A DNA stretch of 64,000 bases from Takakia lepidozioides (Eukaryota > Plantae > Bryophyta): assembly GCA_030704615.1 (NCBI GenBank), contig CM060732.1, positions 59,148,001-59,212,000 of the forward strand. The letters are read 5' to 3'. The notes below the pieces were generated by a model that did no database searches, was not told the DNA's origin, and saw nothing but the letters and a program-made list of their open reading frames with translations. Below are positions 2,644 through 35,608 of this stretch, one piece after another. Position numbers and translations under genes: made by a program. Numbering within the stretch: the stretch's first letter is position 1; every line of letters starts with the position of its first letter.

Positions 2644-2748
2644 TGGGGCCCCAAGTGTTGAGCGGCACCAGCTAGTTGGTGGAGCTGTGAGGTGGTGAGT
2701 AACTGCAGGATCAGGAGGATCAGGAGGACGAGAGAGACGAAGGGAACC

Positions 2749-4852: not shown

Positions 4853-5778
4853 TGTTAGAGGACTGTCTGGGACTTAGGCACTTTTACGGGATCTGTGGGG
4901 TACCCTTAATTTTTGCACAGACTGAGACCAACAGGAGCCTTAAGGGTGACAGCAGCGCACTTTAGGGGGAGGTTACACAGCCCGTCACAGTCCGACACAG
5001 CCCGTCACAGCCAACACAGCTCGTCATAGTCCAACACAGCCCGTCACAGTCCGACACGGCCCGTCACAGTCCGACACAGCCGACACAGCCAGACACAGCC
5101 GTCACAGCCAGTCACAGCTTGACACAGCTGTCACGACCATAGGGAACGGATAGCAGGACAGGGAACGACTGTGGGGAACAACATCTGCGAATGGAACATG
5201 TTAGTTCACAGATGACGGTTAGTGAGAGAAACGGTTAGAACAACGGGTAGGAAGATAAAGCCAGGAGCAAGGACTGGAAAATGATCACTTCTTGGGGGGA
5301 CTTCGGACATCACTGGGAGGAAATGAGGCAGAGAGGCATCTCTGAGCAGAAAGAGGGAGAGCACGGAGTAGGAGGAGGACGATCTGTTGATGCTTGATGA
5401 ATGCAGGCAGTAGAGTTGTAATGTAGAGCAGATTAGAGACTCCATGGCTTCAGCCTGATACTTGATAGATATTAATCTGATACATACTTCATACTCACAC
5501 TGTGTAGAGAGATCTGAGTGAAGCTGTGGAATGAATGGATGAGTTGATGGAATCTGATAGATTGCTGAAGCAAACTGATACTTAATTACCAACAGTAAGG
5601 TAACTAGCTAACATGAATGCGGGAAGGAAAACAAATAGGAAACACCCCCATGATACACTAGCTGTAGGTCATGACTGATTGTTCTGAGCGGGCTGAGTGC
5701 TTAGAGATTCCCAACTCTTCTATCTTGGAGTTTCCGCCTCGGATAGCGAAGGGATGGGTGAGTAAAAGCCGCGCGACA
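4853..5778 (+). repeat. 5' LTR of element A (926 bp) with internal CACAGCC-type minisatellite (~4975-5133)
   Basis: TGTTAGAGG...CGCGACA; direct repeat of 17108-18062. Confidence 0.95.
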
Positions 5779-6367
5779 TTTGGCGACCATACTTGGGAAC
5801 TGGGTCATGAACAACCAGATGTGACAGGCATCTAGTGGGATCATGGTGGTTGGAGAATTAAAGAATTTGATGTGAATCAAATTCCTTGTGAAACTGAGAA
5901 GGAAAGATTGTCCAAACGATTCTTTCAAAGGTTCTTGGAATTGCCAGACGGTTGTAAAGAAAACATTCTTAAGAGAGTGCATGATGCTGACCCTGAATGG
6001 GGTCTGGAGAAAGGAGTGATAAAGATTTATCAGGTGGCCTGTAGAGGAAGAGCACGTTGGTTACCAACACTGGTTTATGTGATAGCATTGCTATCCATTA
6101 AGCGAGTAGAGTTTGAAGGCTGGGAGGAAAGAAAGGTGAATGTTTTTTACTCATATGCACAAAGAGCTTGTACTGGTAAAGAATTGGATTCCAAAGGATA
6201 TTTTGTGGATCAAACTCACACCAAGAACAGCTTTCCAGACTTGTTTGCCATATGGTTATATGGTAACGGAGACTTCTAGTATAGCCAAGGGTGCATTGAA
6301 GCTTGAAAGAAACCCAGGCATATACGAGAGATATTACAGAAGAGAGTTTTGGTTATTGCCACATTAA
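5671..6367 (+). pseudogene. Accessory ORF0 of A (disrupted copy)
   Basis: Collinear with the intact 231-aa ORF at 33948-34643; TGG>TAG at 5833-5835 and a frameshift in the T-run near 6145. Confidence 0.8.
5781..5798 (+). promoter_or_regulatory. Primer binding site of A, tRNA-Arg-like
   Basis: TGGCGACCATACTTGGGA 2 nt after the LTR; resembles the Ogre-type tRNA-Arg PBS (TGGCGAC...ACTGGGGA). Confidence 0.8.
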
Positions 6368-6388
6368 AAGAAATGAAAGACATGGGAC

Positions 6389-12300: not shown

Positions 12301-12737
12301 AGATGTATGATAACAACACCGCCATGTTACAAACCATTAACAAAGAGATGCTGGGAAGAGTCAATGCCAATAAGTTGAAGGGGTACAGTGGTATCCATGA
12401 CAAACCATTGCAGCATGATTTGCATGTTGAAACGCAAAAACAGTCACGGGCTGCGCCAGTGATACCAACGGAGTATGGAGCACTTGTCGCTAAGCCGAGC
12501 ATATATGACCAGGGCGGGCAGAACAAGAGCGACACAGCCTATCACAGCCCATCACGGCGTGACACAGCCTATCACAGCCCAACACGGCGCGACACAGCCT
12601 ATCACAACCCAGCAAGACGTGACACAGCCTATCACAGCCCAGCACGGCGCGACACAGCCTATCACAGCCCAGCACGGCGCAATACAGCCTATCACAAACT
12701 ACCACAGCGTGTCACAGCCTATCACAGCTTACCATAG
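6389..12737 (+). pseudogene. gag-pol of A, disrupted
   Basis: Gag with 3 CCHC-type knuckles, protease LIDGGSG, RT FLDD, RH, INT HHCC/DDE/GPY. Relative to B there are frameshifts at ~6423, ~7838, ~9837 and ~10787, and stops at 6958, 8223, ~8529, 11541 and 12735. Confidence 0.95.
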
Positions 12738-12799
12738 TGCAACACAGCCTATCACACGTACCACAGTATGACACAGCCTGTCACAGCTCAACACAGCCT
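12531..12799 (+). repeat. 30-bp coding tandem repeat (DTAYHSPARR) at the integrase C-terminus
   Basis: GACACAGCCTATCACAGCCCAGCACGGCGT-like units, about 8 copies. Confidence 0.9.
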
Positions 12800-13667
12800 A
12801 CTAGGGTTACACAATCCATAGAATCAGTGACTGGTGGACGCAGGATAACTTCAGGGAAATGGCTGGCGGAAGAAAGGACGGAAGCCAGTTTAGAAAGGGA
12901 CACGTGGAAGTCAGGGCGCAACACACAGCTGAGAAGGAAGTGCAAGAACAGGTGTCATCAAGAAAGAGGACAAGAATGGCCGTAAAAAATACCTACTTAG
13001 CACGTCAATTCGGATGAATGGCGGGCCCATTAATGAATACGGAAAAAGGGCAACAGAACAAACGGCAAGTACAGAAAAACGAAATTCTTGTCACATGTGT
13101 TATCCTAGTGGACAGTCCAGCAGAGAAAGTCCACTAAAGAAAATTAAATCTAAAATCCAGTCACAGCGGTTACAGCCAATCGAAAGCCAGAAAAGGAATC
13201 AAGAAATTGAAGGGAATTTAAGCGCAAGAGTCGGCGTCGTTCTAAGTAACGGGCGTCTCGACGGGACAAACCATCAATGCTATAGCTTTGAAGCTATGGA
13301 GGAACTAACAAACTATACGCTCGCAATATTACTCACGCAGTGGCATAGGGACGGAAGAACAGAGCGAATTTTTTCTCTTAATCGATGCTTGCAAGCCCCG
13401 CAGGCTTACAAGAAATTACCCATAGCTTTTTGTGGCAACCATACGTTTATGCTTTGTGCCCTGCAGGCATTTCTTCAATTGTTACAGCCAAAACCTTTCT
13501 GTGGGTCTAGAATGAAGAGAGTGAGAGGAATGGAAGAAATCAGGGTGAAGAGCACCACAATCCTGCAAAAACAAACAATTGCTACTCCACAGGCGGTACA
13601 GTTACTGAAGGAGCTGCGATTGGAAGGATTGCAAAGCAAAGATTGGACATTGCACCATAGATAGTAC

Positions 13668-16600
13668 ATGTTACAATTCTTGCAGAACTTTGAGCCTAGG
13701 ACAGGAGCAACAACGGTGAAGGGAGTTGAATTAGAAATTACTCCCCTATACCTACAGCAATTGTTTCAATTGCCAGCAGGTCAGGTGCATGTGGAAGAGC
13801 ACAGGGTAAGACTGCAAATAGGGGACTTATTCCAAGAAGGGAGTTTCTTTAAAACTCAGGGTTATGCTTGTACCAAGGCCGTGTACCCAGGGCTAAGGGA
13901 GGTAGGCCAGGTATTGAACGTTCTGTTTGCCATGAAACAGAACCAACAGTATTTGAGCAGATCCTTCACAGAGGAAATACTCAAAGCCCTGAGAGGAGAA
14001 GAGGTAGAATGGGCGGACATAATGTACAACGCACTGATAGAGGAGATGAAAAGATTACAGGGCACTGCCGCAAAGTCTCCTATTATAGTGTCTGGCCCAA
14101 TCATTGCTCAAATAATTCTTGATTCTGGCATACTTGATGCTCGAGAAAGAAAGGAGATGGGAGTGTTTGAGACTGAAACCACTGCAATGGAAGAGCAAGG
14201 CTCTTCACACAGTGAGGGTGGACTGGCAGGGCAACCCCAGACTAAGAGACAGAGGCGGGGAAAGACTGTAGTGGCGGATCCACTAGCTTCACGGAAACCG
14301 CATGATAATGTTTCCCAAGCTCTTGTACAGGAAGGGGCACAGCAGCATAGAGAACTGCTATTATTGGAAGGAGGACCTTCCGAGAGGGAAGAGGAAGTTA
14401 CTTCAGTATCACAGCCATCACAGCCAGATAATTGGCTTGTCACAAAGTTACCACAAGTTGTCCATGCAGTTCCACCAGAAATAATTGATTTGGAGAAAGA
14501 AGGGTTAGACATTCCCACTACAGAACAGGTGGTGGCAGAAATTGAGAAGGGAGACCTTCTCTATGAATATTCTGGTCTGGTCAAGGACACAGTGATTCCG
14601 GAGGTGCAACAGTTGTACAGGGGAAACCTTGCGGTGCATATAATACACAAACCTGTGACGGAGGTACCACAGGTAGAATGTCAAGACACTGCAGCACCGG
14701 TGACGGATGAAGCGGTTCAGGAAGAAAATCTGGTGGGGCAATGGCCTGAGTGGTTCGTGAGGCATCACACTGTTGAGGATCAGGGAGAACAGCAGCAAGC
14801 TCACCATGATGACCCTCAACAGGCCATGCTTATGAGTTCCATAAGCAGGACACTTAATTTGTTGGGGACTTATGTCAAATCCCATGTTCCAACTACCCAA
14901 TTGGCAGCTTTGAGGGAGGAACTCAGGAAGGAGTTTGAGGCTCGACTTGCCACTGAGTGTGCAAACAAGGTTGATGAAGAGGTCACTCTCAAGATGCAGC
15001 AAGACTTGGAGAGTACAGAAGCGGCTTTGCAATTGGCCAAGGAACAATTGATTGAGGCAGGCCTCGCGCAAGACCAGTTGCACGAAGCACATAAGCAACA
15101 GCTATACCAAATGCAAGTGAAGCATGAAAGCAAGTTGCAAGAAGTGAATGCACTACATACGGAGTTGCAGACAGTGCATGACAGGATGGCCATACAATGC
15201 GCTACACTCACAATTATGCTTGACCAAGCTACAATAGAAATAAACAGTCAAGCGGAAAGATGTACGAAGGCAGAGACAGAGAATGTTGAGCAATTGAAAC
15301 TCATTGTCGATATGAAGAATACAATCTGTCGCAATGAGAATACTTTCAAACAATACAGGCAGGTTGAAGCTGACCAAGAGAGGTACATCCTGGAGTTGCA
15401 ACAAACGCTCATGGTAAATAGAAATGAACTCTCTGTGGCTAACAAGGCTTGGAAGGAAGCCAATAATCTAGCTGCTGCCTATGCGAGTTTGGTTGAACCT
15501 CATGCGAAGCGCATGGAGGCTTTACAGCAGCAGATAGATGTGTACAGGCTCACAGAGGAGAAAACTCTAAGGGGTGCCACAAGCAACTTGGTGGATAACC
15601 ACCTTATGCAGGTCTGGTTAACACAAGGGCCGATAGAGGGCAAAGCACCAAGAAAGCTCACCCAAAGCGAGATGAATGAGCTCAGAGTGCAAGTGCAGAA
15701 CATTGCCACAACTACTATAGACAATGTCTATAGTAGGATAGCAGAGTTACAGGAGGATGTAGACGGCCTGCAGACTCAAGTGGAGGACCTCACTTCAAAT
15801 ATCGACAAAAGAGTCTGTATACCTGAGGAACAGCTAATGGCTTCTTATTTACAAGCGAGAACTTTGGCTTTTCAGTCTTCTTCACAGGGGGTGCAGGAGA
15901 TGCCAATGGTACAAGAGCCAGTGCCACCAACACCACAACAAGTCATTGTGCCAGTAGCTGACCTTGTTGTTACTACAGCCACACCACAGCCACCACAGCC
16001 TGAGGTATGGGGGAATGCTGCTTTTAACCCACCTAAAACTCCAGCTGCAAGGGAGTACAGTCGGGCTATGATTATGCCCTTCAACCAAATTCCCATTGTG
16101 TTGGATTTGGCTTGGAAAGAATTTAGTCCTCCGCAGTCATTGGCACATTACTATCAAATCATGCGCATTTGGCTGCCAGTGGCCACTAGGACTAAAGTTC
16201 TTCCGAACAATCGACCAATTGAGGATCATCACTTTGCGCAGTACTGGCATGAGGCAAGTACCATGTTGAAGGAATTAATTGTCTTCCAAGTTGTACATGG
16301 ATTCATTTATACCAAGACCAAAGAGATAGCAAGTATTGTCATGGGCTGCGGGTTATACTACGCTGCTTGTTTTCTGGTACGTTATCACATTGAGCAACAG
16401 AAGATGCAAACGCGCTTTCTGAATTATTCCAGTGGGGATCATTGGGTCTTCCCTTCAGTGCCACCTCATATGTACCTATATGAGGCAAAAGTTATGATGC
16501 AAAAGGATTCTCAGATTCGTTCATGGTTTCATGCGGCCTGGAACAATTTGTCAACACAGAAATTCGGGCCTGACGATATTTTCTTTAAGGGACATGAGAC

Positions 16601-17069
16601 ATGGAAATATTTGCACAATTCACAAGTCATTGGTACACCACTCACCTGGACAGACAAGGAGCTCAGGGTCTTCACCAATTTTGCAATTCAGCGCTTACAA
16701 CAAGTTTTACAATTTAAACTTCCAGACATGGTGGGACAACATTGTATGCCCCAGAGAATTCCAGTTAAAGTTCGACAGTTAAAACACCTCAGGGGGGACG
16801 AGGATTCTGATACAACTGTTTCTTCAGCGGACTCTTTTGACATGGCAGAGGACTATGCAATTCAGATGGCAGAGAAGAAGAGACGGGGGTCTCCTATGCC
16901 TGAAAGATTACCTCGATATCAGCCTCCAGAGGGACTGACATATCCAGGTAGTGTTCAATCATCTCCCTCAACCAGTGACAGAACACGGGCTCGCACACGG
17001 AGTCCTTCACGAGACTCTAATCGTCAGAAGGGTGCTCGCTCACAAAGGGTTACAAATCCCAAACAGTAA
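13668..17069 (+). CDS. Accessory 3' ORF of A (1133 aa), env-position; Athila-ORF/plant-transposon-like N-terminus, long coiled coil, basic SR-rich tail
   Basis: Uninterrupted ORF between pol and PPT. In frame with ATG 13512 across one TAG (13662). The N-terminal pattern FLQNF..TVKGVELEITP..LFQLP..VEWADIMY resembles 3' ORFs of plant retroelements. Confidence 0.8.
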   Translation: MLQFLQNFEPRTGATTVKGVELEITPLYLQQLFQLPAGQVHVEEHRVRLQIGDLFQEGSFFKTQGYACTKAVYPGLREVGQVLNVLFAMKQNQQYLSRSFTEEILKALRGEEVEWADIMYNALIEEMKRLQGTAAKSPIIVSGPIIAQIILDSGILDARERKEMGVFETETTAMEEQGSSHSEGGLAGQPQTKRQRRGKTVVADPLASRKPHDNVSQALVQEGAQQHRELLLLEGGPSEREEEVTSVSQPSQPDNWLVTKLPQVVHAVPPEIIDLEKEGLDIPTTEQVVAEIEKGDLLYEYSGLVKDTVIPEVQQLYRGNLAVHIIHKPVTEVPQVECQDTAAPVTDEAVQEENLVGQWPEWFVRHHTVEDQGEQQQAHHDDPQQAMLMSSISRTLNLLGTYVKSHVPTTQLAALREELRKEFEARLATECANKVDEEVTLKMQQDLESTEAALQLAKEQLIEAGLAQDQLHEAHKQQLYQMQVKHESKLQEVNALHTELQTVHDRMAIQCATLTIMLDQATIEINSQAERCTKAETENVEQLKLIVDMKNTICRNENTFKQYRQVEADQERYILELQQTLMVNRNELSVANKAWKEANNLAAAYASLVEPHAKRMEALQQQIDVYRLTEEKTLRGATSNLVDNHLMQVWLTQGPIEGKAPRKLTQSEMNELRVQVQNIATTTIDNVYSRIAELQEDVDGLQTQVEDLTSNIDKRVCIPEEQLMASYLQARTLAFQSSSQGVQEMPMVQEPVPPTPQQVIVPVADLVVTTATPQPPQPEVWGNAAFNPPKTPAAREYSRAMIMPFNQIPIVLDLAWKEFSPPQSLAHYYQIMRIWLPVATRTKVLPNNRPIEDHHFAQYWHEASTMLKELIVFQVVHGFIYTKTKEIASIVMGCGLYYAACFLVRYHIEQQKMQTRFLNYSSGDHWVFPSVPPHMYLYEAKVMMQKDSQIRSWFHAAWNNLSTQKFGPDDIFFKGHETWKYLHNSQVIGTPLTWTDKELRVFTNFAIQRLQQVLQFKLPDMVGQHCMPQRIPVKVRQLKHLRGDEDSDTTVSSADSFDMAEDYAIQMAEKKRRGSPMPERLPRYQPPEGLTYPGSVQSSPSTSDRTRARTRSPSRDSNRQKGARSQRVTNPKQ

Positions 17070-17090
17070 ACCGTGAGGACACGGCTTTTT

Positions 17091-17104
17091 GAGAGGGGAA
17101 GGGG
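17091..17104 (+). promoter_or_regulatory. Polypurine tract of A
   Basis: GAGAGGGGAAGGGG just before the 3' LTR. Confidence 0.9.
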
Positions 17105-17107
17105 TAA

Positions 17108-18062
17108 TGTTAGAGGACGGTCTGGGACTTAGGCACTTTTACGGGATCTGTGGGGTACCCTTAATTTTTGCACAGACTGAGACCAACAGGAGCCTTAGGG
17201 GTGACAGCAACGCACTTTAGGGGGGGGTTACACAGCCCGTCACAGTCTGACACAGCCCGTCACAGCCAACACAGCTCGTCACAGTCCAACACAGCCCGTC
17301 ACAGTCCGACACAGCCCGTCACAGCCAACACAACTCGTCACAGTCCAACACAGCCCGTCACAGTCCGACACAGCCGACACAGCCAGACACAGCCGTCACA
17401 GCCAGTCACAGCTGTCACGACCATAGGGAACGGATAGCAGGACAGGGAACGACTGTGGGGAACAACATTTGCGAATGGAACATGTTAGTTCACAGATGAC
17501 GGTTAGTGAGGGAAACGGTTAGAACAACGGGTAGGAAGATAAAGCCAGGAGCAAGGACTGGAAAAGGATCACTTCTTGGGGGGACTTCGGACATCACTGG
17601 GAGGAAATGAGGCAGAGAGGCATCTCTGAGCAGAAAGAGGGAGAGCACGGAGTAGGAGGAGGACGATCTGTTGATGCTTGATGAATGCAGGCAGTAGAGT
17701 TGTAATGTAGAGCAGATTAGAGACTCCATGGCTTCAGCCTGATACTTGATAGATATTAATCTGATACATACTTCATACTCACACTGTGTAGAGAGATCTG
17801 AGTGAAGCTGTGGAATGAATGGATGAGTTGATGGAATCCGATAGATTGCTGAAGCAAACTGATACTTAATTACCAACAGTAAGGTAACTAGCTAACATGA
17901 ATGCGGGAAGGAAAACAAATAGGAAACACCCCCATGATACACTAGCTGTAGGTCATGACTGATTGTTCTGAGTGGGCTGAGTGCTTAGAGATTCCCAACT
18001 CTTCTATCTTGGAGTTTCCGCCTCGGATAGCGAAGGGATGGGTGAGTAAAAGCCGCGCGACA
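17108..18062 (+). repeat. 3' LTR of element A (955 bp)
   Basis: About a dozen substitutions by eye versus the 5' LTR, plus minisatellite copy-number difference. Confidence 0.95.
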
Positions 18063-18123
18063 GGCTTGAGGAGAGAATATACTCAAAAAAATATGCTTGC
18101 TCTAACGTTTTGACTAGAGTTAC

Positions 18124-18903
18124 CTCCTTGTTATCAAACAGGGCAACTGCACGGATGCAACTCTCATCAGCCAAGGATTCAGTATCCCCACAAGTATCTA
18201 ACAGGACATGCAGTGCACAGAAGGATGATGGCAAATTATCAAGCCTGACCGAAAAAATGAACTCTTTGCGAGCACCCCCAATGCAGCTTGGTTGTGTGTC
18301 ACACACATTTAACTCAAAGTCCACAATCTCCTCCTCGGCACAATCCAGTTGTTCTGCTAGCACCTGAATGAATGCCACTGTGTTAGAGAAATGACACAAA
18401 AATTGGAGGGCAGTAGAAGCGGGTAAAACATAGAATGTACTCATAAGATGGCCTTTGTCGTGGCCGTGTGGCCCCAGTTTGGGTGGAACAAGAGGGAACA
18501 AACACTACCTTTGTGAGGGTTTCACTCCAGTAGTGGGACTTACCTTGATATGAACAATTTGTTCAGGCTTTCCACTCTAGAATGCCCTCATCAATCTGCT
18601 GCGTGTGATCTGCCCATCAATTAGACCCCAACAGAGTCAGGGCTTTAGGCTCAGTCTCAAGATTTTGAAAGATGGTGAACAGAGGTGCAGGGACTATGTT
18701 CTTGAATATAGCCTGATGACGGTCGCTCTTTGATGAGAATACCCTGTACATTGTGTCAGAAAATGGATAGTGTCTTAAGGCCGCCCGCACATTGACAATC
18801 TCCCTTTCCTCTCTGCATCTGTTTTTTTGTTCGAAGTTAGACTCCCCACCCTCAGTCAAAAGAGAGAGAGAGAATGTACTCATAAGACGTTGATTGCCGT
18901 AGT

Positions 18904-25800: not shown

Positions 25801-26873
25801 TGTCGCGCGGCTTTTACTCACCCATCCCTTCGCTATCCGAGGCGGAAACTCCAAGATAGAAGAGTTGGAAATCTCTAAGTACTCAGCCCGCGCAGAACAA
25901 TCAGTCATGACCTACAGCTAGTGTATCATGGGGGTGTTTCCTATTTGTTTCCCTTTTCGCATTCATCTTGGCTACCTTACCATTGATAATTACGTATTAG
26001 TTTCCTTCACTCCTCCATTCAATCCACAGCTTCACTCAGATCTCTCTACACAGTGTGATTGTATCGTATAAATATCAGATTATGATTTATCAGGTATCAG
26101 GCCGAAGCCATTGTATCTCTATTCTCCTCTACAATATCCCTACGGCTTTGCATCTAACAAGCATCTACTAATCCTCCTTCATCGTGCTCTCCGATCTCCG
26201 CTTCCGCCTGACTCCCAAGTCCTCCCCCGAATAATGATCTCATCATAATCCCCGTTCTTCCCTTTATCCTCCTATCCGCGGTTCTAACCGTTTCCCTCTC
26301 TAACCGTCGTATGTGAACTAACATGTTCCCTTCTCTGGTGTTGTTCCCCACAGTCGTTCCCTGTCCTACTCTTCGTTCCCTATTATCGTGACAGCTGTGT
26401 CAAGCGGTGACTGGCTGTGTTTGGCTGTGTCGGGCTGTGACTGGCTGTGTGGCTATGCCGGGCTGTGACTGGCTGTGTGGGCTGTGTCTGCTGTGACGAC
26501 TGTGACGGGCTGTGTGGGCTGTGTGGGCTGTGTCGGCTGTGTGGGCTGTGTGGGCTGTGTCGGCTGTGTCGGGCTGTGTGGGCTGTGTGGGCTGTGACGG
26601 GCTGTGTGGGCTGTGACGGCTGTGTGGGCTGTGTGGGCTGTGTCGGCTGTGTGGGCTGTGTCGGCTGTGTGGGCTGTGACGGCTGTGTGGGCTGTGTCGG
26701 CTGTGTGGGCTGTGACGGCTGTGACGGCTGTGTGGGCTGTGTGGGTTGTGTAACCCCCTTCTACAGTGCTCTGCTGTCACCCCTAAGGTTCCTGTTTGTC
26801 TCAGTCTGTGCAAAAATTAAGGGTACCCTACAGATCCCGTATAAGTGTCTAAGTCCCCTACAGTCCTCTAACA
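25801..26873 (-). repeat. 3' LTR of B with ~360-bp GGCTGTGT minisatellite (26393-26752)
   Basis: Near-identical to 34536-35608; only one difference seen by eye (25810 G vs 34545 T). Confidence 0.95.
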
Positions 26874-26945
26874 TTACCCCTTCCCCCCTCAAAAAGCCGT
26901 GTCCTCACGGTTTATTGTTTTCGAGTAGCAAACCTTTGTGAGTGA

Positions 26946-29900
26946 TCACTTTGTTGACGTTGAGAGTTTCGTGGTGGGCTGTGGCCGCTGTGACTGGATT
27001 TTAACTTTTATCTTCTTTAGTGGACTTTCCCTGTTGGATAGTCCACTAGGATCACACATGCGACATGAATTCGGCTTTTCTGTACTTGCCGTTCGTTCTG
27101 TTTCCCTTTTTCCGTAATCATTAATGGGTCCGCCTTTCATCCCTTTTGACGGCCGTTCTTGTCCTCTTTCTTTTTGACACCTGTCCTTGCACTTCATTCT
27201 CTGCTGTGTGTCGCACCCTGACCTCCACGTGTCTATTTTTAAATTAATTTCCGTTTCTTCTTCCTTCAGCCATTTTACTGAAGTTTTTATGTGTCCACTT
27301 GTCACTGATTCTATGGATCGTGTAACTTTAGTAGGCTGTCTTGAGCTGTGATAGGCTGTGTTGCACTGTGGTAAGCTGTGATAGGCTGTGACACGCTGCG
27401 GTAGGTTGTGATAGGCTGTGTCACGCCTTGCTGGGTTGTGGTTGGCTGTGTCACGCCTTGCTGGGCTGTGATAGGCTGTGTCACGTCGTGACGGGCTGTG
27501 GTAAGCTGTGTTGCGCCTTGCTGGGCTGTGGTTGGCTGTGTCACATCGTGATGGGCTGTGATAGGCTGTGTCACGCCGTGATGGGCTGTGATAGGCTGTG
27601 GTGCGCCTTGCTGGGCTGTGGTTGGCTGTGTCACGTCGTGATGGGCTGTGATAGGCTGTGTCACGCCGTGATGGGCTGTGATAGGCTGTGGTGCGCCTTG
27701 CTGGGCTGTGGTTGGCTGTGTCACGTCGTGATGGGCTGTGATAGGCTGTGTCACGCCTTGATGGGCTGTGATAGGCTGTGTCACGTTTGTTTTGCCCACC
27801 CCGGTCATATATACTGGGCCTAGCGACAAGTGTTCCATACTCCGTTCGTAACACTGGTGCAGCCCGTGACTGCTCTTGCGGTTCAACATGCAAATCATGT
27901 TGCAGGGGTTTGTCATGGATACCACTGTACCCCTTCAACTTATTTGCATTGACTCTTCCCAGCATTTCTTTGTTAATGGTTTGTAACATGGCTGTGTTGT
28001 TATCATACATCTTTTGTATGACATAAGGTCCTTTCCATGGTGATTTAAGCTTAGAAGCTTGAATCTTTCCTTTCTTCTGCAACCATAAAACCAAATCCCC
28101 CGTCTTAAAAGTCTTTAATTTACCTTTATCAAACTGTTCCTTTCGCTTCATCTGAATTCTGGTCATATTATCAGCTGCATCAGCACGTACTTCTTCCACA
28201 TGGTATAATTCATGTTTCCTGACCTTGATGGAGTCTTGCAATTCCATTCTTTTTCCCCACTCTGTTCTCATGGTAGGTAACAGGAATTCCACTGGAAGTA
28301 AGGCTTCCATACCATAAACTAATTGGAATGGTGTATACTTAGTGGTGACTTTATATGAAGTCCTGTATGACCACAAAGCTGTCAGCAGCTTTGTATCCCA
28401 ATCCGTTCTGTTTGCATTGACTATCTTAGCCAAGATAGTACATAGTATTTTGTTGGTAGCCTCTGCCTGTCCATTACCCTGTGGGTAATATGTTGTACTC
28501 TTTCTATGCACAATCATAAACTCTTTAGTCAATAACTCAATGGTCTCATTCATGAAGTGACTTCCTTGATCACTGATAAATTCTAAGGGACATCCAAATC
28601 GTGTAAGTATGTTCTCGTACAGGAACCTTGCTGTGGACTTGGCTGTGTTGTCCCTCAAAGCTTTAGCTTCCACCCACTTTGTAGTATAATCAGTGGCTGT
28701 AATTATGTACCTGTTTCGTGTATTCTTGGATGGTGGATTAATTGGTCCAACAAAGTCTAGTCCCCATTTCTGAAATGGTTCCGTAGGCATTGTAGGATGC
28801 AAGGCCATTCTTCCAGATCTCTGCAAAGGTCCTAGCCTCTGACATTCATCACACTTCTGACAATACTCATGTACATCTTTGAACAACGTAGGCCACCAGT
28901 ATCCTGCGAGTAGTATCTTTCTACTGGTAGTCTCTTCTCCAAAATGACCTCCAGCCACTCCTTTATGAACTTCCTCCAAGACTTTATTTACTTCATGGTG
29001 GTACAAGCATCGTTTTAGTACTCCATCAGGTCCTAACTTATACATTCTGCTTCCTACCATAGTATAAGGTAAAGCTCTGATAGCAATTCTTTTCCTTTGC
29101 TCCTTACCATAACTAGGTGGGCACTGACCATGAGCAAGGTAGTATCTGATTGGCCATTGCCAATCTAACCATTCATCTGCACTTCCTTGCACCTCCATTA
29201 CAAATAAACTCGCATCAGGTAACTGATCGTCCACTCCTGTGGCGGCCTCTCCTGTTGTTAGTCGTGACAAATGATCTGCCACAAGATGCAAACGGCCAGG
29301 CTTGTAAATAACCTCGAACTCAAACTCATGCAAGATTATTAACCACCTCGCTATCCTTCCACTTATCAAAGGTTTGTTCACCAGATATATCAGAGCCTGG
29401 TGATCCACATAAAACATAAACTTTCTTCCCAATAGGTAATGCCTGAATTTCTTCACTGCATAGATCATTGCCAATGCTTCTCTTTCCGTTGTGCTATAGT
29501 TCCTCTCAGCACTGTTCATCAACCGGCTAGCATAGTACACAGGTGAATCTATATTCCCTGTAACATTCTGGGCTAACACCGCTCCCAATGCTTCTCCTGA
29601 TGCATCGCAGTGAACATGAAATACTACATGCCAGTGAGGGTTAATCAGCACAGGTGTAGTTGTTACTGACAGTGTAAGTTCCTCAAACGCCTGTTGACAT
29701 TCAGCTGTCCATGCAAACACTGCATCTTTCTTCAGAAGCTTGCTCAATGGTGCTGCTATTTGTGCATACCTTTTGACAAATCTTCTGTAATAACTGGTTT
29801 GCCCAAGGAATCTCCTTAAACTCTTAACATTCACTGGTGGTGGAGAGACTTTAATGGACTCTGTCTTCCTGGGATCCACAAGAAGTCCCTTCTTACACAC

Positions 29901-31709
29901 TATGTGTCCCAGAAGCACCCCTGAGTTCACACAGAAAGTACACTTCTCTGGATTCAAGCCCAGACCTCTCATCCTGCATCTGGCCAGGCATAACTCCAAT
30001 TTATGCAAGTGCTCATTCTTAGAGCTGTACACACTGAAATCATCCAAAAACACCTGCATGAAATCATCCAGATACTCTTGAAAAGATTCACTTATCACTC
30101 TCTGAAAGGTCGCTGGTGCATTACAAAGTCCAAAGGGCATGACTTTGTATGCATAAGCCCCCCAGTCTGTGATGAAAGCTGTTTTCCCTTGGTCTTCTTC
30201 TGCCACTTGCACTTGATTATAACCACTGAAGCCATCCATGAATGAGTACATCTCATGGCCTGCCACAGTGTCTAATACTGCTTCTGTGAATGGCAAAGGG
30301 AAAGGATCTTTCTTCGTACAAGCATTCAGCTTCTTATAGTTCACACATACTCTTAGTTTGCCATTCTTCTTGGGAACTATAACAATGGGTGACAACCAAG
30401 TTGTATACTCTATTGGGTATATAAACTTAGCCTCAGCCAACTTCTTTATCTCTTCTCCAACCTTCTGTGCGTAGTTGGGATTCATTCTATACCTCGCCTG
30501 CTTGATTGGCACTGACCCTGGTTCCAGTTCAATTTTATGCTGACAGACTTCAGGTGGTATCCCTTTTAGATCCTCATAGCTCCAAGCAAATACATCTCTG
30601 TATTTGATGAACAAGCTTTTAGCTTCTTCGAAGAATTCCGGCTCCAAATCAGCTCCTACTTTCACCATCCTTGGTTCCTCCGGAGTTCCCACATTTACTT
30701 CTCTCACCTGCTCATCAGCTGTGATTGTCCAACCAGTCACCACTTCATCCTGTAAGCTCACAGTGGCTGGTTCTTCTAGGATTTCTATTTCTCCTTCTCT
30801 TTCTTCATAGAAATGTGATGGGTAAATGCTGGTTTCTTCTTCCGTTGGTGTTGCTGTCACTACACCACAGCAGATACCTCTCAAACAACTTAGGCTTTCC
30901 AGCCGCATCTCTGCAACTTGCTCCCACTCTGGGTGTGCAGCAAATATGGTAGCTTCCTGCTCCTCATCCAGTCCTCCCCTCCAGTCATACTCTCTGACTC
31001 CTCGAGGTCTTCTTGTAGCAGGTAATCTACTAGATTTCTTTGTGGTAATTTGTATCTCGTGCATCCCATTATGCACAGTTAGTAACTGAGAATTCCAGTC
31101 ATGGAATACCCTGGCCTGTTTCAGCCACGGACGTCCCAATAATAAGGAATAAGCCTCCATGACTTCATCCATTTTTAATACAGTTACTGTGATCAGAAAG
31201 ATCATTTTCTGTATCTGTATCTTAACTCCTCTTATTAATCCCAATGGCTGTACACTTCTTTGATCTGCCATTGTTACTGTAAATGGGGCTGGTTTCATGT
31301 TACTTAGACCAAGCTTCTTCCTTAATTGGTCTGTCATGATATTTACTCCAGAACCACCATCTATCAGTACATCAGTTAGTTCTGTGCTTCCAATTCTCAA
31401 TTGGATTACTGGCATAGAATCATCAAAGTCCATGACTGGTTCTCGCCCTTCCGGCTTCACATTATAACTGGTCACCTTGCTGTTCAGGTCTGTGTTTCCT
31501 GTTTCTTGGGCAATTCGATTGATTGCCTGATACAGCCTGTGCCTACAATAAGGTGCCACAGCTAATAGCTGTCCAATGGTAATTTCTGCTTTGGTCTGAC
31601 ATATTACTTCAGCCAAAGTCTCTTCATTACTTTGCATGTCTGCATCTTCTTTTCTCCTTTCTTCCTCACTCTCCTCTTTTTCTCCATCCGAATCAGAGGA
31701 ATCTGCCAC
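26946..31709 (-). CDS. pol: Pol of B (PR-RT-RH-INT plus repeat-rich tail), 1587 aa open
   Basis: LIDGGSG, FLDD, DAS/EREAL, HHCC-DDE and GPY motifs, no stops. Confidence 0.95.
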   Translation of the reverse strand: MADSSDSDGEKEESEEERRKEDADMQSNEETLAEVICQTKAEITIGQLLAVAPYCRHRLYQAINRIAQETGNTDLNSKVTSYNVKPEGREPVMDFDDSMPVIQLRIGSTELTDVLIDGGSGVNIMTDQLRKKLGLSNMKPAPFTVTMADQRSVQPLGLIRGVKIQIQKMIFLITVTVLKMDEVMEAYSLLLGRPWLKQARVFHDWNSQLLTVHNGMHEIQITTKKSSRLPATRRPRGVREYDWRGGLDEEQEATIFAAHPEWEQVAEMRLESLSCLRGICCGVVTATPTEEETSIYPSHFYEEREGEIEILEEPATVSLQDEVVTGWTITADEQVREVNVGTPEEPRMVKVGADLEPEFFEEAKSLFIKYRDVFAWSYEDLKGIPPEVCQHKIELEPGSVPIKQARYRMNPNYAQKVGEEIKKLAEAKFIYPIEYTTWLSPIVIVPKKNGKLRVCVNYKKLNACTKKDPFPLPFTEAVLDTVAGHEMYSFMDGFSGYNQVQVAEEDQGKTAFITDWGAYAYKVMPFGLCNAPATFQRVISESFQEYLDDFMQVFLDDFSVYSSKNEHLHKLELCLARCRMRGLGLNPEKCTFCVNSGVLLGHIVCKKGLLVDPRKTESIKVSPPPVNVKSLRRFLGQTSYYRRFVKRYAQIAAPLSKLLKKDAVFAWTAECQQAFEELTLSVTTTPVLINPHWHVVFHVHCDASGEALGAVLAQNVTGNIDSPVYYASRLMNSAERNYSTTEREALAMIYAVKKFRHYLLGRKFMFYVDHQALIYLVNKPLISGRIARWLIILHEFEFEVIYKPGRLHLVADHLSRLTTGEAATGVDDQLPDASLFVMEVQGSADEWLDWQWPIRYYLAHGQCPPSYGKEQRKRIAIRALPYTMVGSRMYKLGPDGVLKRCLYHHEVNKVLEEVHKGVAGGHFGEETTSRKILLAGYWWPTLFKDVHEYCQKCDECQRLGPLQRSGRMALHPTMPTEPFQKWGLDFVGPINPPSKNTRNRYIITATDYTTKWVEAKALRDNTAKSTARFLYENILTRFGCPLEFISDQGSHFMNETIELLTKEFMIVHRKSTTYYPQGNGQAEATNKILCTILAKIVNANRTDWDTKLLTALWSYRTSYKVTTKYTPFQLVYGMEALLPVEFLLPTMRTEWGKRMELQDSIKVRKHELYHVEEVRADAADNMTRIQMKRKEQFDKGKLKTFKTGDLVLWLQKKGKIQASKLKSPWKGPYVIQKMYDNNTAMLQTINKEMLGRVNANKLKGYSGIHDKPLQHDLHVEPQEQSRAAPVLRTEYGTLVARPSIYDRGGQNKRDTAYHSPSRRDTAYHSPSRRDTANHSPARRTTAYHSPSRRDTAYHSPSRRDTANHSPARRTTAYHSPSRRDTAYHSPSRCDTANHSPARRNTAYHSPSRRDTAYHSPARRDTANHNPARRDTAYHNLPQRVTAYHSLPQCNTAYHSSRQPTKVTRSIESVTSGHIKTSVKWLKEEETEINLKIDTWRSGCDTQQRMKCKDRCQKERGQERPSKGMKGGPINDYGKRETERTASTEKPNSCRMCDPSGLSNRESPLKKIKVKIQSQRPQPTTKLSTSTK
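27345..27785 (-). repeat. 30-bp coding tandem repeat (DTAYHSPSRR/DTANHSPARR), about 14-15 units
   Basis: Seen directly; a 3-unit (90-bp) higher-order period is visible. Confidence 0.9.
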
Positions 31710-33925
31710 AGGAATATCAGTACTTTTTGCATTTCCCTTATAGTATCTGCCACTTCCTTGTGCAGTTCCTTCTCATCCTTCCAAGTCTCTTCCTCTTCAG
31801 GCATATCATTGCCACTTCCAGTCTCATCTTCTTCCTCTTCTACTGGAGGTATTAGTTTAGCTTTACTTCTTGTTACTATCATTGTACTTACTTCTGGTAC
31901 AACACATGGCCTAACCATGTGAGCTGCCACCACTGGGCCCTCATTCACAGGAGCTCTCATCTCATTCTGGTGTCTTATCCAGAATGAACAGGCTGCCTTG
32001 CGATGTCCTGGCTGATTACAATAGTAACATAGCTCTTCACCATTGGGTCCTCGCCCTTGGTCTGGTCTTGGATTATTTCTATAATCCTGATTCCCGGGCT
32101 GGTAATTCCCCCTCGGATTACCCTGATAGTTGCCTCTGGAATTTCCTTGGTAATTCCCTCTTGAATTGCCTCTTCCTTCCATGCCATTGTTATAACCACC
32201 AGACCTACCATAGTGGTCCTGATCATTGCTTCTTCTTGGCTGGGGTTGCACCTGATGCACCCTCACTTGCCTAGGTTCTCTGGCAGCTGTCCTTCTGTTG
32301 TAGTAACAATTCTCAGTAGAATGGTTATCCATTTTACAGATAGTACAGTGTTTCTCCTTCATGTGGCATTCTGTAGTGGTATGGCCTTCATTCTGGCACT
32401 TTGCACACCATACACCCTTCCTCCAATGTGTTGCAGCCTCTGTGGCATACTTCTTCAAGATTTCTTCCAATCTTTTCTCATAGTTATCCCTCTTCAACTT
32501 TTCCTTTCTCTTACTCTTTCTTTTTAGTTCTTGCTCTTCTTCTTCATCTGACTCATCTTCAGAGTCCTCATCTTCCTTTTTCTCTCTCCTGAGCATTCCC
32601 AATTGCTCAATTCTGTTCGCAGTTTCAAATGCCTCCTCCACTGTATTATGGGGTAACATATCCACTTTCTTCTGCAACTCTGGTCTTAGTCCACTCACAA
32701 ACCAAGTCTTCTGTAAACCGGGTGCTGGTACTGCAGCCAGCTTTTTCATCATCAATTCCATCTTCTCCATATACTCTTCAACAGTTTCATGCTTCTTCTG
32801 CTTCAGCTGTTGTAAACTTCCATACACTTCATCCTCAGTTTTACTTGTCCTGAACCTATTTCGAAATGCTGTATTCAAGCCATTCCAGGTTAGGAAATGA
32901 TTATCAGGGAATCTTGCATACCATTCACTTGCTTTCTTGATAAGTGAACAAGGAAACAGTCTCATCTTGGCATCATCGCCATTCTCATTGTTCACTATAC
33001 ACATGTGCTCAAATTGGCTAATGTGTACATCGGGATCCCCTTTTCCTGAATATATTGGAAAGGGTGGTTTTGCCCGTGTTGGTTGTAACGCCATCTGTGG
33101 CCCTACCTTCTGCCCACTGACAGGTGCTGGCACCCTTGCTGGTGCTGGTCCTTCTGGACCTGTTGTTTTTGTGGTGGATCTTCCACCAAGTGGTGGCCCT
33201 TGAGCACTCCCTGCTTCTGGCCCCACGATATTCACAGTATTCCCAGCTTCAGTTGCACTACTTCCCACACTCCCTGTCCCCCCAGAGCCAGATCCAGGCA
33301 GCCCGCCTGATCCCCCTGAGCCGACACCTTCGTTGGCCTGTGATCCAAGTGCTCCACTTGATCCAGGTCCAACGGGTTGGGATGTCCTGGTTGTAGTCTC
33401 AACCTCAGCTGTTGGGTCTACTTCTTCATATTCTTCCTCTTCCAATTTCTTCTCTCTGTTTTCATCATTCAAGTTCTGCCCTTGGGTTTCTTCTTCACTC
33501 ATGTAACTCAACTGTAATGGTGTTGGAGAGTCTGAACTCTCCGTTGGCTCTGCCACATCCTCATCTCCTTCTTCATCTTCTGCTTCAGAAACTGGAGTTC
33601 CTGCTTTTGGTGTTCCATGCCAACTTTTATCAAAGATTTCTGTCAAATCTTTTATCCAAGGATGTACCTCAGATCTTTCACCTTTTGATTGATCTTCTTC
33701 CTGTACCAATTCCCTTAATCTTTCTTGCAAAGAAACAGAAGGAGTGGCATCCAACTCTAGTTCTTCCGGTATAGGTGATGCACTTTTTGATCTTGATGGT
33801 GTGAGAGGTCCAGATGATTCCCCTATGTCTATTCCTCTCTCCCAAAGATATGGATAATTAGCTTTCAGATAGCTTTCCCTTTTTAATGAATATCTTTGTC
33901 GTCTAGCTTCTCTTTCATCACTCAT
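31604..33925 (-). CDS. gag: Gag of B (773 aa)
   Basis: Retrotransposon gag core (LKQKKHETVEEY, FVSGL), three CCHC knuckles, GNSRGNYQ repeats. Confidence 0.93.
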   Translation of the reverse strand: MSDEREARRQRYSLKRESYLKANYPYLWERGIDIGESSGPLTPSRSKSASPIPEELELDATPSVSLQERLRELVQEEDQSKGERSEVHPWIKDLTEIFDKSWHGTPKAGTPVSEAEDEEGDEDVAEPTESSDSPTPLQLSYMSEEETQGQNLNDENREKKLEEEEYEEVDPTAEVETTTRTSQPVGPGSSGALGSQANEGVGSGGSGGLPGSGSGGTGSVGSSATEAGNTVNIVGPEAGSAQGPPLGGRSTTKTTGPEGPAPARVPAPVSGQKVGPQMALQPTRAKPPFPIYSGKGDPDVHISQFEHMCIVNNENGDDAKMRLFPCSLIKKASEWYARFPDNHFLTWNGLNTAFRNRFRTSKTEDEVYGSLQQLKQKKHETVEEYMEKMELMMKKLAAVPAPGLQKTWFVSGLRPELQKKVDMLPHNTVEEAFETANRIEQLGMLRREKKEDEDSEDESDEEEEQELKRKSKRKEKLKRDNYEKRLEEILKKYATEAATHWRKGVWCAKCQNEGHTTTECHMKEKHCTICKMDNHSTENCYYNRRTAAREPRQVRVHQVQPQPRRSNDQDHYGRSGGYNNGMEGRGNSRGNYQGNSRGNYQGNPRGNYQPGNQDYRNNPRPDQGRGPNGEELCYYCNQPGHRKAACSFWIRHQNEMRAPVNEGPVVAAHMVRPCVVPEVSTMIVTRSKAKLIPPVEEEEDETGSGNDMPEEEETWKDEKELHKEVADTIREMQKVLIFLWQIPLIRMEKKRRVRKKGEKKMQTCKVMKRLWLK

Positions 33926-33947
33926 GTCCCATGTCTTTCATTTCTTT

Positions 33948-34643
33948 TTAATGTGGCAATAACCAAAACTCTCTTCTGTAATATCTCTCGTATATGCCTG
34001 GATTTCTTTCAAGCTTCAATGCACCCTTGGCTATACTTGAAGTCTCCGTTACCATATAACCATATGGCAAACAAGTCTGAAAAGCTGTTCTTGGTGTGAG
34101 TTTGATCCACAAAATATCCTTTGGAATCCAATTCTTTACCAGTACAAGCTCTTCATGCATATGAGTATAAACATTCACCTTTCTTTCTTCCCAGCCTTCA
34201 AACTCTACTCGTTTAATGGATAGCAATGCTATCACATAAACCAATGTTGGTAACCAACGTGCTCTTCCTCTACAGGCTACCTGATAAATCTTTATCACTC
34301 CTTTCTCCAGACCCCATTCTGGATCAGCATCATGCACTCGTTTAAGAATATTTTCTTTACATCCGTCTGGCAATTCCAAGAACCTTTGAAAGAACTGTTT
34401 GGACAATCTTTCTTCCTTCGTTTCACAGGGAATTTGATTCACTTCAAATTCTTTAATGGTCCAACCACCATGATCCCACCAGATGCCTGTCACATCTGGT
34501 TGTTCATGTCCCAGTTCCCCAGTATGGTCGCCAAATGTCGCGCGTCTTTTACTCACCCATCCCTTCGCTATCCGAGGCGGAAACTCCAAGATAGAAGAGT
34601 TGGAAATCTCTAAGTACTCAGCCCGCGCAGAACAATCAGTCAT
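33948..34643 (-). CDS. Accessory ORF0 of B, 231 aa, unknown function, F-box-like motif
   Basis: Open from an ATG inside the LTR through the PBS; differences from the A copy are mainly synonymous; motif FLELPDGCKENILKRV. Confidence 0.75.
   Translation of the reverse strand: MTDCSARAEYLEISNSSILEFPPRIAKGWVSKRRATFGDHTGELGHEQPDVTGIWWDHGGWTIKEFEVNQIPCETKEERLSKQFFQRFLELPDGCKENILKRVHDADPEWGLEKGVIKIYQVACRGRARWLPTLVYVIALLSIKRVEFEGWEERKVNVYTHMHEELVLVKNWIPKDILWIKLTPRTAFQTCLPYGYMVTETSSIAKGALKLERNPGIYERYYRREFWLLPH
34516..34533 (-). promoter_or_regulatory. Primer binding site of B, tRNA-Arg-like
   Basis: TGGCGACCATACTGGGGA on the minus strand, 2 nt after the 5' LTR. Confidence 0.8.
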
Positions 34644-35608
34644 GACCTACAGCTAGTGTATCATGGGGGTGTTTCCTATTTGTTTCCCTTTTCGCATTCA
34701 TCTTGGCTACCTTACCATTGATAATTACGTATTAGTTTCCTTCACTCCTCCATTCAATCCACAGCTTCACTCAGATCTCTCTACACAGTGTGATTGTATC
34801 GTATAAATATCAGATTATGATTTATCAGGTATCAGGCCGAAGCCATTGTATCTCTATTCTCCTCTACAATATCCCTACGGCTTTGCATCTAACAAGCATC
34901 TACTAATCCTCCTTCATCGTGCTCTCCGATCTCCGCTTCCGCCTGACTCCCAAGTCCTCCCCCGAATAATGATCTCATCATAATCCCCGTTCTTCCCTTT
35001 ATCCTCCTATCCGCGGTTCTAACCGTTTCCCTCTCTAACCGTCGTATGTGAACTAACATGTTCCCTTCTCTGGTGTTGTTCCCCACAGTCGTTCCCTGTC
35101 CTACTCTTCGTTCCCTATTATCGTGACAGCTGTGTCAAGCGGTGACTGGCTGTGTTTGGCTGTGTCGGGCTGTGACTGGCTGTGTGGCTATGCCGGGCTG
35201 TGACTGGCTGTGTGGGCTGTGTCTGCTGTGACGACTGTGACGGGCTGTGTGGGCTGTGTGGGCTGTGTCGGCTGTGTGGGCTGTGTGGGCTGTGTCGGCT
35301 GTGTCGGGCTGTGTGGGCTGTGTGGGCTGTGACGGGCTGTGTGGGCTGTGACGGCTGTGTGGGCTGTGTGGGCTGTGTCGGCTGTGTGGGCTGTGTCGGC
35401 TGTGTGGGCTGTGACGGCTGTGTGGGCTGTGTCGGCTGTGTGGGCTGTGACGGCTGTGACGGCTGTGTGGGCTGTGTGGGTTGTGTAACCCCCTTCTACA
35501 GTGCTCTGCTGTCACCCCTAAGGTTCCTGTTTGTCTCAGTCTGTGCAAAAATTAAGGGTACCCTACAGATCCCGTATAAGTGTCTAAGTCCCCTACAGTC
35601 CTCTAACA
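34536..35608 (-). repeat. 5' LTR of B
   Basis: Direct repeat of 25801-26873. Confidence 0.95.

What the first reader, a model, noticed from the sequence alone, without database searches (positions are those of the whole stretch)
33948..34643. Selected, F-box-like accessory ORF that starts inside the LTR and reads through the PBS
Seen: a 231-aa ORF whose ATG (34643) lies 108 nt inside the 5' LTR, crosses the LTR end and PBS, and stops 22 nt before gag. Against the A copy, the stretch PDGCKENILKRVHDADPEW has six synonymous changes (GGT/GGA, AAC/AAT, AAG/AAA, AGA/CGA, GAC/GAT, CCT/CCA) and no amino-acid change, which points to protein-level purifying selection. Known: F-box motifs begin with (F)LxLPxExLxxIL, and polerovirus P0 uses an F-box-like motif to suppress silencing. 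Inference: FLELPDGCKENILKRV...VAC..RW may be an F-box, so the element could encode an SCF-hijacking or anti-silencing protein. This would differ from the 5' ORF of Ogre elements.
Basis: partly seen in the sequence, partly recalled or inferred. Interest (0 to 1): 0.85.

Follow-up and report, generated by a model that had tools for sequence, protein, structure and literature searches.

The report
Selected orphan pre-gag ORF in gypsy element
A young, very abundant plant Ty3/gypsy retrotransposon carries a real extra gene in front of gag; evolution preserves the last 148 amino acids, but nothing testable shows it is an F-box protein, and its function is unknown.

Summary
A 231-codon ORF (33948-34643, minus strand) starts 108 nt inside the 5' LTR. 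It crosses the LTR end and a PBS-like TGGCGACC... site and stops 22 nt before gag.

Against copy A, dN/dS is 0.16 for the whole ORF, versus 1.2 and 1.6 in the other two frames, 0.30 for gag and 0.08 for pol. The constraint sits in codons 84-231: 14 synonymous against 2 non-synonymous changes, ω = 0.03, p = 3e-8. Codons 1-83, which overlap U5, the PBS and the leader, are only weakly constrained.

The F-box reading is not supported:
- Pfam gives no hit at E ≤ 10, even on the isolated motif.
- The P0-type LPxxL/I motif is not met (LPDGC).
- Searches of 1.84 billion representative proteins, PDB sequences, metagenome contigs and viral contigs find no homologue.
- AlphaFold models are unusable (pLDDT 32-40).

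The two relatives examined (55% and 56% pol identity) have no called ORF before gag.

Best reading: a lineage-specific orphan "extra ORF" (eORF-5'F type), a known and heterogeneous class in plant gypsy elements.

First-stage notes of this scan describe what appears to be the same 696-nt ORF at several other places in this genome.

The parts
34536..35608 (-). 5' LTR of copy B (1073 nt); the U3 part contains a CACAGCC-type tandem array at 35129-35486
   Evidence: Self-BLAST pairs it with 25801-26873 at 99.9% identity. There is a single difference, at 34545/25810. TG..CA ends and the target-site duplication were checked.
33948..34643 (-). ORF0: a 231-codon extra ORF (27 kDa) including its stop, placed 5' of gag in the sense orientation
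   Evidence: Length significance. Whole-ORF dN/dS of 0.158 against copy A.
34395..34643 (-). ORF0 codons 1-83: an acidic, weakly constrained N-terminal part that overlaps U5 (codons 1-36), the LTR end, the PBS and the leader
   Evidence: dN/dS about 0.49, not significant. The LTR part has 0 synonymous and 4 non-synonymous changes. pI 5.3.
33951..34394 (-). ORF0 codons 84-231: a basic C-terminal domain under strong purifying selection
   Evidence: 14 synonymous against 2 non-synonymous differences from copy A; dS 0.167, dN 0.0057, ω = 0.034, p = 2.6e-8. Substitutions by codon position are 3/1/12. pI 9.1.
34254..34382 (-).
   Evidence: The translation was checked. It is identical in amino acids between A and B, with six synonymous changes. 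No Pfam F-box match at E <= 10.
34517..34533 (-). PBS-like sequence TGGCGACCATACTGGGG, 2 nt after the LTR end and inside ORF0 (codons 37-43)
   Evidence: The primer tRNA was not identified, and the window contains no tRNA gene.
31604..33925 (-). gag (773 aa), a separate cistron in a different frame, with 22 nt and in-frame stops between it and ORF0
   Evidence: Pfam Retrotrans_gag, Ty3_capsid and zf-CCHC. The frame relation was read from the sequence.
26946..31709 (-). pol (PR-RT-RNase H-integrase) with a repetitive C-terminal tail
   Evidence: Pfam RVT_1, RT_RNaseH, Integrase_H2C2 and rve; no chromodomain and no second RNase H were reported.
25801..26873 (-). 3' LTR of copy B. It carries the same ATG plus 36 codons, which then run into flanking DNA.
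5671..6367 (+). ORF0 homologue in the older copy A (element 4853-18062), broken by an in-frame stop at 5833-5835 and a 1-nt insertion near 6143-6147
   Evidence: The ends of copy A are confirmed by an uninterrupted paralogous site at 61764-61790.

Best explanation
ORF0 is a real, lineage-restricted accessory gene of a young, very high-copy plant Ty3/gypsy LTR retrotransposon. In the terms of Neumann et al. 2019 it is an extra ORF of the eORF-5'F type.

Shown:
- It is a separate cistron from gag.
- Its last 148 codons evolve under purifying selection at least as strong as on pol.
- It has no detectable homologue or known domain.

Inferred:
- It is translated from the full-length element RNA. 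The AUG at 34643 in R/U5 is the only in-frame AUG upstream of the conserved domain.
- The variable N-terminal 83 residues are simply what U5, the PBS and the leader happen to encode.
- The conserved, basic C-terminal domain is the functional part and acts in trans in the element's own life cycle. This could be RNA or particle handling, or dealing with the host; the evidence does not say which.
- Gag, 22 nt downstream and behind 16 intervening AUGs, would then need reinitiation after ORF0 or a different (spliced or internally started) RNA.

It should not be called an F-box protein.
For: - The ORF is longer than any of 20,000 shuffles of the leader.
- Nei-Gojobori comparison of A and B: ORF0 ω = 0.158 (19.5 synonymous, 12.5 non-synonymous, p = 4.6e-7). 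The other two frames of the same DNA give 1.23 and 1.56. Gag gives 0.30 and pol 0.084.
- Codons 84-231: ω = 0.034, p = 2.6e-8. Their dS (0.167) is like that of pol (0.185), so the conservation is at protein level rather than nucleotide level.
- Substitutions by codon position are 7/6/20.
- Copy A's LTRs differ by only 12 substitutions in 916 aligned positions. Most A-B differences therefore arose while the lineages were still active, not by decay after insertion.
- U3 upstream of about 34690 is 18% diverged between A and B, while ORF0 is 4.75% diverged, like gag and pol.
- Contigs of the family in a DNA run break at 34709-34793. This fits a conserved block that begins just upstream of the ATG.
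- A stop lies two codons upstream of the ATG, and there is no other in-frame ATG before codon 163.
- Third-position GC of ORF0 (0.377) matches gag (0.378).
- The language-model recognition score of the C-terminal domain is 2349; about 9 in 100 shuffled proteins reach the reference value of 2300.
- About 35,600 contigs of one DNA run lie on the 2.8-kb stretch, evenly over ORF0 and gag. The tables show no common insertion or deletion inside ORF0.
- Extra ORFs in plant gypsy elements are common, heterogeneous and mostly without known domains (PMC6317226).
- A coding sequence that contains the PBS is known from yeast Ty1 gag (PMC4974528).
Against: - The selection test rests on two copies, one of them broken.
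- Codons 1-83 are not significantly constrained, so the true start is not proven.
- The transcription start is unknown. If it lies further upstream, five short upstream AUGs precede the ORF0 AUG.
- There is no RNA or protein evidence. The one run guessed to be RNA held only diverged, partial contigs.
- No homologue was found anywhere, and the structure predictions failed, so the function is a guess.
- How gag would be translated behind a 231-codon ORF is unexplained.
Confidence: 0.72

Rival explanations
1. ORF0 is an F-box or F-box-like adaptor that binds host SKP1 and recruits a host protein (for example a silencing factor) to the SCF ligase, as polerovirus P0 does.
For: The stretch FLELPDGCKENILKRV...VACRGRARW loosely recalls LPxE(I/L)L...VCKxW. 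It is perfectly conserved in amino acids between A and B despite six synonymous changes. Viral F-box-like motifs are often too short for Pfam to detect.
Against: - No F-box family matches at E <= 10 on the whole protein, the C-terminal part or the isolated motif.
- The P0 motif LPxxL/I (PMC4885075) is not met; the ORF has LPDGC.
- The distance from LP to the W is about 12 residues longer than in canonical F-boxes. That consensus is from my own knowledge, not from a tool.
- 69% of shuffles of this protein contain an LP dipeptide.
- The low-confidence models put beta strands after the first helix rather than three helices. This is weak evidence.
- The whole 148-aa domain is conserved, not the motif in particular.
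Confidence: 0.05
2. The conserved part is not translated as the 231-aa protein. It is an exon of a spliced product, or it starts at a non-AUG codon, and the LTR-encoded N-terminus is incidental.
For: - Codons 1-83 are weakly constrained and codons 84-231 very strongly.
- A consensus-like donor TGG|GTGAGT lies after codon 29 (34557|34556).
- CAG| lies after codon 83 (34395|34394).
- Together these would define an in-frame 162-nt interval that removes the PBS.
Against: - The interval is purine-rich before the CAG, a poor plant acceptor context.
- An in-frame coincidence has a 1 in 3 chance.
- No RNA data are available.
- First-stage notes on several other copies in the genome describe a 696-nt ORF with the same features. 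These notes are unchecked, and I could not compare their sequences.
Confidence: 0.12
3. It is a chance ORF in a conserved non-coding leader (packaging, dimerisation or priming signals), and the synonymous bias is a sampling accident.
For: Leaders are conserved for cis-acting reasons. Only two copies were compared. There are no homologues and no expression evidence.
Against: - Cis-acting RNA constraint does not favour third codon positions of one frame (3/1/12 in codons 84-231).
- p = 2.6e-8.
- The other two frames give ω above 1.
- dS equals that of pol.
- The ORF length was never reached in 20,000 shuffles.
Confidence: 0.06

Closest known systems
Extra ORFs (eORF-5'F) of plant Ty3/gypsy retrotransposons (Steinbauerova et al. 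2011; Neumann et al. 2019, PMC6317226), including Ogre ORF1
   Same: A sense-strand ORF between the 5' LTR and gag of a plant gypsy element. It is orphan or heterogeneous in sequence and of unknown function. The element also has tandem-repeat arrays, and a sister subfamily has a 3' extra ORF.
   Different: - No plant mobile domain, Transposase_28 or Athila ORF-1 domain.
- 231 codons, below the 250-codon working cut-off of that survey.
- It starts inside the LTR.
- pol shows no second (archaeal-type) RNase H, so it is not a Tat/Ogre element by that marker.
- Here purifying selection is measured directly.
Yeast Ty1 GAG, whose coding sequence contains the PBS (PMC4974528)
   Same: A translated ORF in the 5' part of the element RNA contains the primer binding site, so the same nucleotides serve both coding and priming.
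   Different: In Ty1 the ORF is gag itself, in a Ty1/copia element. Here it is an additional cistron in front of gag in a Ty3/gypsy element. That the Ty1 ORF also begins within the LTR is from my own knowledge and was not checked here.
Polerovirus P0 and other viral F-box-like silencing suppressors
   Same: A small orphan protein of a plant genetic parasite with an LP-containing conserved stretch.
   Different: The minimal LPxxL/I motif is not met. There is no Pfam match. SKP1 binding and silencing suppression are untested.

Membership tests
F-box (Pfam F-box / F-box-like families) | Significant match to an F-box profile | tested here: not met
   hmmscan against Pfam-A found no family at E <= 10 for the 231-aa protein, the 149-aa C-terminal part, or the 61-aa and 47-aa motif fragments.
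F-box (Pfam F-box / F-box-like families) | Three-helix fold of about 40-50 residues | tested here: inconclusive
   AlphaFold2 single-sequence models have pLDDT 31.7 (full length) and 40.3 (residues 84-231). Foldseek against the PDB gave no match at E <= 0.001. The models are too poor to decide.
F-box (Pfam F-box / F-box-like families) | Binding to SKP1 | not testable with these tools
Polerovirus P0-type F-box-like motif | Minimal motif LPxxL/I (PMC4885075) | tested here: not met
   ORF0 has LPDGC at 91-95. The other LP sites are LPTLV, LPYGY and LPH.
Plant LTR-retrotransposon extra ORF, type eORF-5'F (PMC6317226) | Sense ORF between the 5' LTR and the polyprotein, not part of the polyprotein in relatives | tested here: met
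   ORF0 lies upstream of gag and is separated from it by stops. Two relatives at 55% and 56% pol identity have no called ORF upstream of gag and no similarity to ORF0. In L001 gag starts about 68 nt after the LTR end.
Plant LTR-retrotransposon extra ORF, type eORF-5'F (PMC6317226) | At least 250 codons (working cut-off of that survey) | tested here: not met
   231 codons. This is a survey threshold, not a biological criterion.
Ogre/Tat 5' ORF with plant mobile domain | PMD (pfam10536) in the extra ORF and a second, archaeal-type RNase H in pol | tested here: not met
   No Pfam hit in ORF0. pol shows a single RNase H region.

The most novel reading that the evidence does not exclude
The conserved C-terminal domain is an element-encoded antagonist of host silencing or protein turnover. 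It could be a very divergent F-box-like adaptor, or an Argonaute-binding protein: ORF0 has four GW/WG dipeptides, which only 3.4% of shuffles reach. That would make this an LTR retrotransposon with its own counter-defence gene, translated from the LTR onward.
Probability: 0.08. Interest if true: 0.8.

Novelty: new member of a known kind. Interest (0 to 1): 0.35.

Why it matters
Extra ORFs are common in plant gypsy elements, but whether they do anything is an open question. Neumann et al. 2019 say this explicitly (PMC6317226).

Here an orphan pre-gag ORF in a currently or recently active, extremely abundant family shows purifying selection as strong as on pol. That argues it is needed for the element's spread. 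Such a family is a good place to test what these ORFs do and how a gag placed behind a long upstream ORF is translated.

It is not evidence for a retrotransposon-encoded F-box protein or silencing suppressor.

Tried and rejected
Homologue searches that found nothing usable:
- Word-indexed search of 5.8 billion protein clusters: nothing.
- phmmer against 1.84 billion representatives: two hits, both to internally repetitive proteins and judged spurious.
- PDB sequences at E <= 10: nothing.
- ESM Atlas by features: best score 0.83, within noise, hAT/ZBED1-like. No usable named hit for the C-terminal domain.
- Metagenome and viral contig scans: nothing.
- Exact-sequence look-up: not on record.
- tblastn against the window: only the two copies and their LTR stubs.
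- phmmer against 120 pol relatives, and BLASTP against the long N-terminus of P0014: nothing.

Other steps that led nowhere:
- The gag search was swamped by low-complexity words.
- The structure models were unusable, and the Foldseek result on them is therefore meaningless.
- Complex prediction with SKP1 was not run, because no plant SKP1 sequence was available.

Rejected readings:
- ORF0-gag fusion by frameshifting. The gag frame is closed by a TGA between the ORF0 stop and the gag ATG. The spacer also differs by 1 nt between subfamilies, so the relative frame is not conserved.
- Leaky scanning to gag. There are 16 AUGs in between.

The laid runs gave no expression evidence, because all four were contigs.

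Full report
**Anatomy**

Self-comparison of the window shows two copies of one Ty3/gypsy family.

- Copy B is on the minus strand at 25801-35608. Its LTRs are 1073 nt long and differ at one position. It has TG..CA ends, a 5-bp target-site duplication and a polypurine tract.
- Copy A is on the plus strand at 4853-18062. Its LTRs differ by 12 substitutions in 916 aligned positions, plus repeat-number indels. An uninterrupted paralogue of its insertion site lies at 61764-61790 and fixes its ends.
- B encodes gag (31604-33925) and pol with PR, RT, RNase H and integrase (26946-31709). Pfam reported no chromodomain and no second RNase H.
- A and B are 92.9% identical over 7.8 kb.

**The observation**

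The 231-codon ORF at 33948-34643 is real.

- Its ATG is 108 nt inside the 5' LTR.
- It crosses the LTR end (34536) and the PBS-like TGGCGACCATACTGGGG (34533-34517).
- It ends 22 nt before the gag ATG, in a different frame from gag.
- A stop lies two codons upstream of the ATG. The next in-frame ATG is at codon 163.
- None of 20,000 shuffles of the leader gave an ORF of 231 codons; the maximum was 156.
- In copy A the homologous ORF has an in-frame stop at 5833-5835 and a 1-nt insertion near 6143-6147.

**Selection**

Nei-Gojobori counts between A and B:

| Region | Synonymous | Non-synonymous | dN/dS |
|---|---|---|---|
| ORF0, its own frame | 19.5 | 12.5 | 0.158 (p = 4.6e-7) |
| ORF0 DNA, frame +1 | 5.5 | 26.5 | 1.23 |
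| ORF0 DNA, frame +2 | 4.0 | 22.0 | 1.56 |
| gag | 52.5 | 62.5 | 0.30 |
| pol | 131.8 | 46.2 | 0.084 |
| ORF0 codons 84-231 | 14 | 2 | 0.034 (p = 2.6e-8) |
| ORF0 codons 1-83 | 5.5 | 10.5 | about 0.49 (not significant) |

- In codons 84-231, dS is 0.167, like pol's 0.185, and the codon-position counts are 3/1/12.
- The 36 codons inside the LTR have four non-synonymous and no synonymous changes.
- Copy A's LTRs are only 1.3% diverged. Most A-B differences therefore arose in replicating lineages rather than by decay after insertion.
- At nucleotide level, U3 upstream of about 34690 is 18% diverged. ORF0 is 4.75% diverged, like gag and pol.

So the C-terminal 148 residues are a protein domain under strong constraint. 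The N-terminal part overlaps U5, the PBS and the leader and is loosely constrained as protein.

**Abundance**

One DNA run of the source organism, whose name is coded but which is a plant by the run labels, laid about 35,600 contigs on a 2.8-kb stretch. They lie evenly over ORF0 and gag. Two other coded organisms hold nearly identical pieces.

Among the best-supported variants shown inside ORF0, four are synonymous and four are not. All fall in codons 22-86. The tables show no common indel inside ORF0 (two indel rows are not shown). The variant table is truncated, so this is only suggestive.

All laid runs were contigs, so there is no evidence on transcription.

**What the protein is**

Nothing known matches.

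- Pfam gave no family at E <= 10 for the whole protein, the C-terminal part or the isolated motif.
- The 5.8-billion-cluster search found nothing.
- phmmer over 1.84 billion representatives gave two hits, both to internally repetitive proteins and judged spurious.
- PDB sequences, metagenome contigs and viral contigs gave nothing.
- Atlas feature scores were within noise. The C-terminal domain reached a recognition score of 2349, a value that only about 9 in 100 shuffled proteins reach.
- AlphaFold2 without an alignment gave pLDDT 31.7 and 40.3. The fold is therefore unknown, and the Foldseek result is not informative.

The closest pol relatives in the databases are only 50-56% identical. They come from metagenome contigs and liverworts. 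The two I examined have no called ORF upstream of gag and no similarity to ORF0. In L001, gag starts about 68 nt after the LTR end. ORF0 is therefore restricted to this lineage.

**The F-box idea**

No test that could be run supports it.

- There is no profile match.
- The P0-type minimal motif LPxxL/I (PMC4885075) is not met (LPDGC).
- An LP dipeptide occurs in 69% of shuffles of this protein.
- From my own knowledge of the consensus, the spacing from LP to the conserved W is about 12 residues too long.
- The perfect conservation of the motif is not special, because the whole 148-residue domain is conserved.
- SKP1 binding could not be tested.

I put this reading at about 5%.

**How it probably works (inference)**

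The conserved domain has to be translated from somewhere upstream of codon 84. The only in-frame AUG there is the one in the LTR, which has G at -3 and A at +4.

Two observations suggest that the conserved block begins just upstream of this AUG. One is the sharp drop in A-B divergence near 34690. The other is the set of contig break points at 34709-34793. If that block is R-U5, the AUG would be in the genomic RNA.

ORF0 and gag are separate cistrons.

- The gag frame is closed by a TGA between the ORF0 stop and the gag ATG.
- The spacer differs by 1 nt between subfamilies, so a fixed frameshift fusion is unlikely.
- Sixteen AUGs lie between the two starts, which makes leaky scanning unlikely.

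Gag would then need reinitiation after ORF0, whose stop is 22 nt upstream, or a different RNA. A donor-like TGG|GTGAGT at 34557|34556 is present but untested.

**Comparison with what is known**

Extra ORFs in plant LTR retrotransposons are well documented. They fall into hundreds of unrelated groups, and about four in five have no known domain. Their function is an open question (PMC6317226; PMC4408406). A coding sequence that contains the PBS is known from Ty1 gag (PMC4974528).

ORF0 is thus a new orphan member of a known class, with unusually clear evidence of constraint. It is not a new kind of system.

First-stage notes of this scan describe a 696-nt ORF with the same features at several other places in this genome. 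They also claim that two gypsy families share it. I could not check those notes, and they are not independent evidence.

**Limits**

- Only two copies could be compared.
- There are no RNA or protein data.
- No usable structure was obtained.
- The host species and the primer tRNA were not identified.

Noticed in passing
window 13178-17007 (ORFs 13014-13664 and 13668-17069, + strand): Copy A has about 3.8 kb between pol and the 3' LTR that copy B lacks. It includes an open 1133-aa ORF with no Pfam match, although gag and pol of the same copy are fragmented. So the two subfamilies share ORF0 but differ in having a 3' extra ORF.
   Followed up: partly
window 34551-34560 and 34390-34400 (- strand): A consensus-like splice donor TGG|GTGAGT lies in U5 after ORF0 codon 29, and a CAG| lies after codon 83. 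Together they would define an in-frame 162-nt interval that contains the PBS. Both are conserved in copy A. There are no RNA data to test this.
   Followed up: no
ORF0 residues 28, 60, 110 and 150 (window 33948-34643, - strand): There are four GW/WG dipeptides in 231 residues (10 Trp in all); 3.4% of shuffles reach this count. All four are unchanged in copy A. GW/WG motifs are Argonaute hooks in some viral suppressors. This is a weak lead only.
   Followed up: partly
window 33918-33950 (- strand): Between the ORF0 stop and gag there is an 8-codon mini-ORF (stop included) in the ORF0 frame that overlaps the gag ATG. The A-run just after the ORF0 stop is 1 nt shorter in copy A, in 31 contigs of one DNA run and in a related species, so the ORF0/gag frame relation varies.
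   Followed up: partly
window 35129-35486 and 26394-26751; 27275-27844: Tandem CACAGCC-type arrays lie in U3 of both LTRs. A 30-nt-period array inside the pol ORF encodes a repetitive RRDTAYHSPS-like C-terminal tail. Array length differs between copies A and B.
   Followed up: no
window 1-4852 plus 18063-18241 versus 56932-61952: Copy A sits inside one of two 98.7%-identical copies of a repeat of at least 5 kb. The other copy is uninterrupted, which gives an empty-site control for A's insertion and its GGCTT duplication.
   Followed up: yes
L001 7720-11893: The closest relative with flanking DNA (metagenome contig, 55% pol identity) has three further ORFs of 369, 672 and 317 aa between pol and its 3' LTR, none with a Pfam family on record. 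It has no ORF before gag.
   Followed up: no
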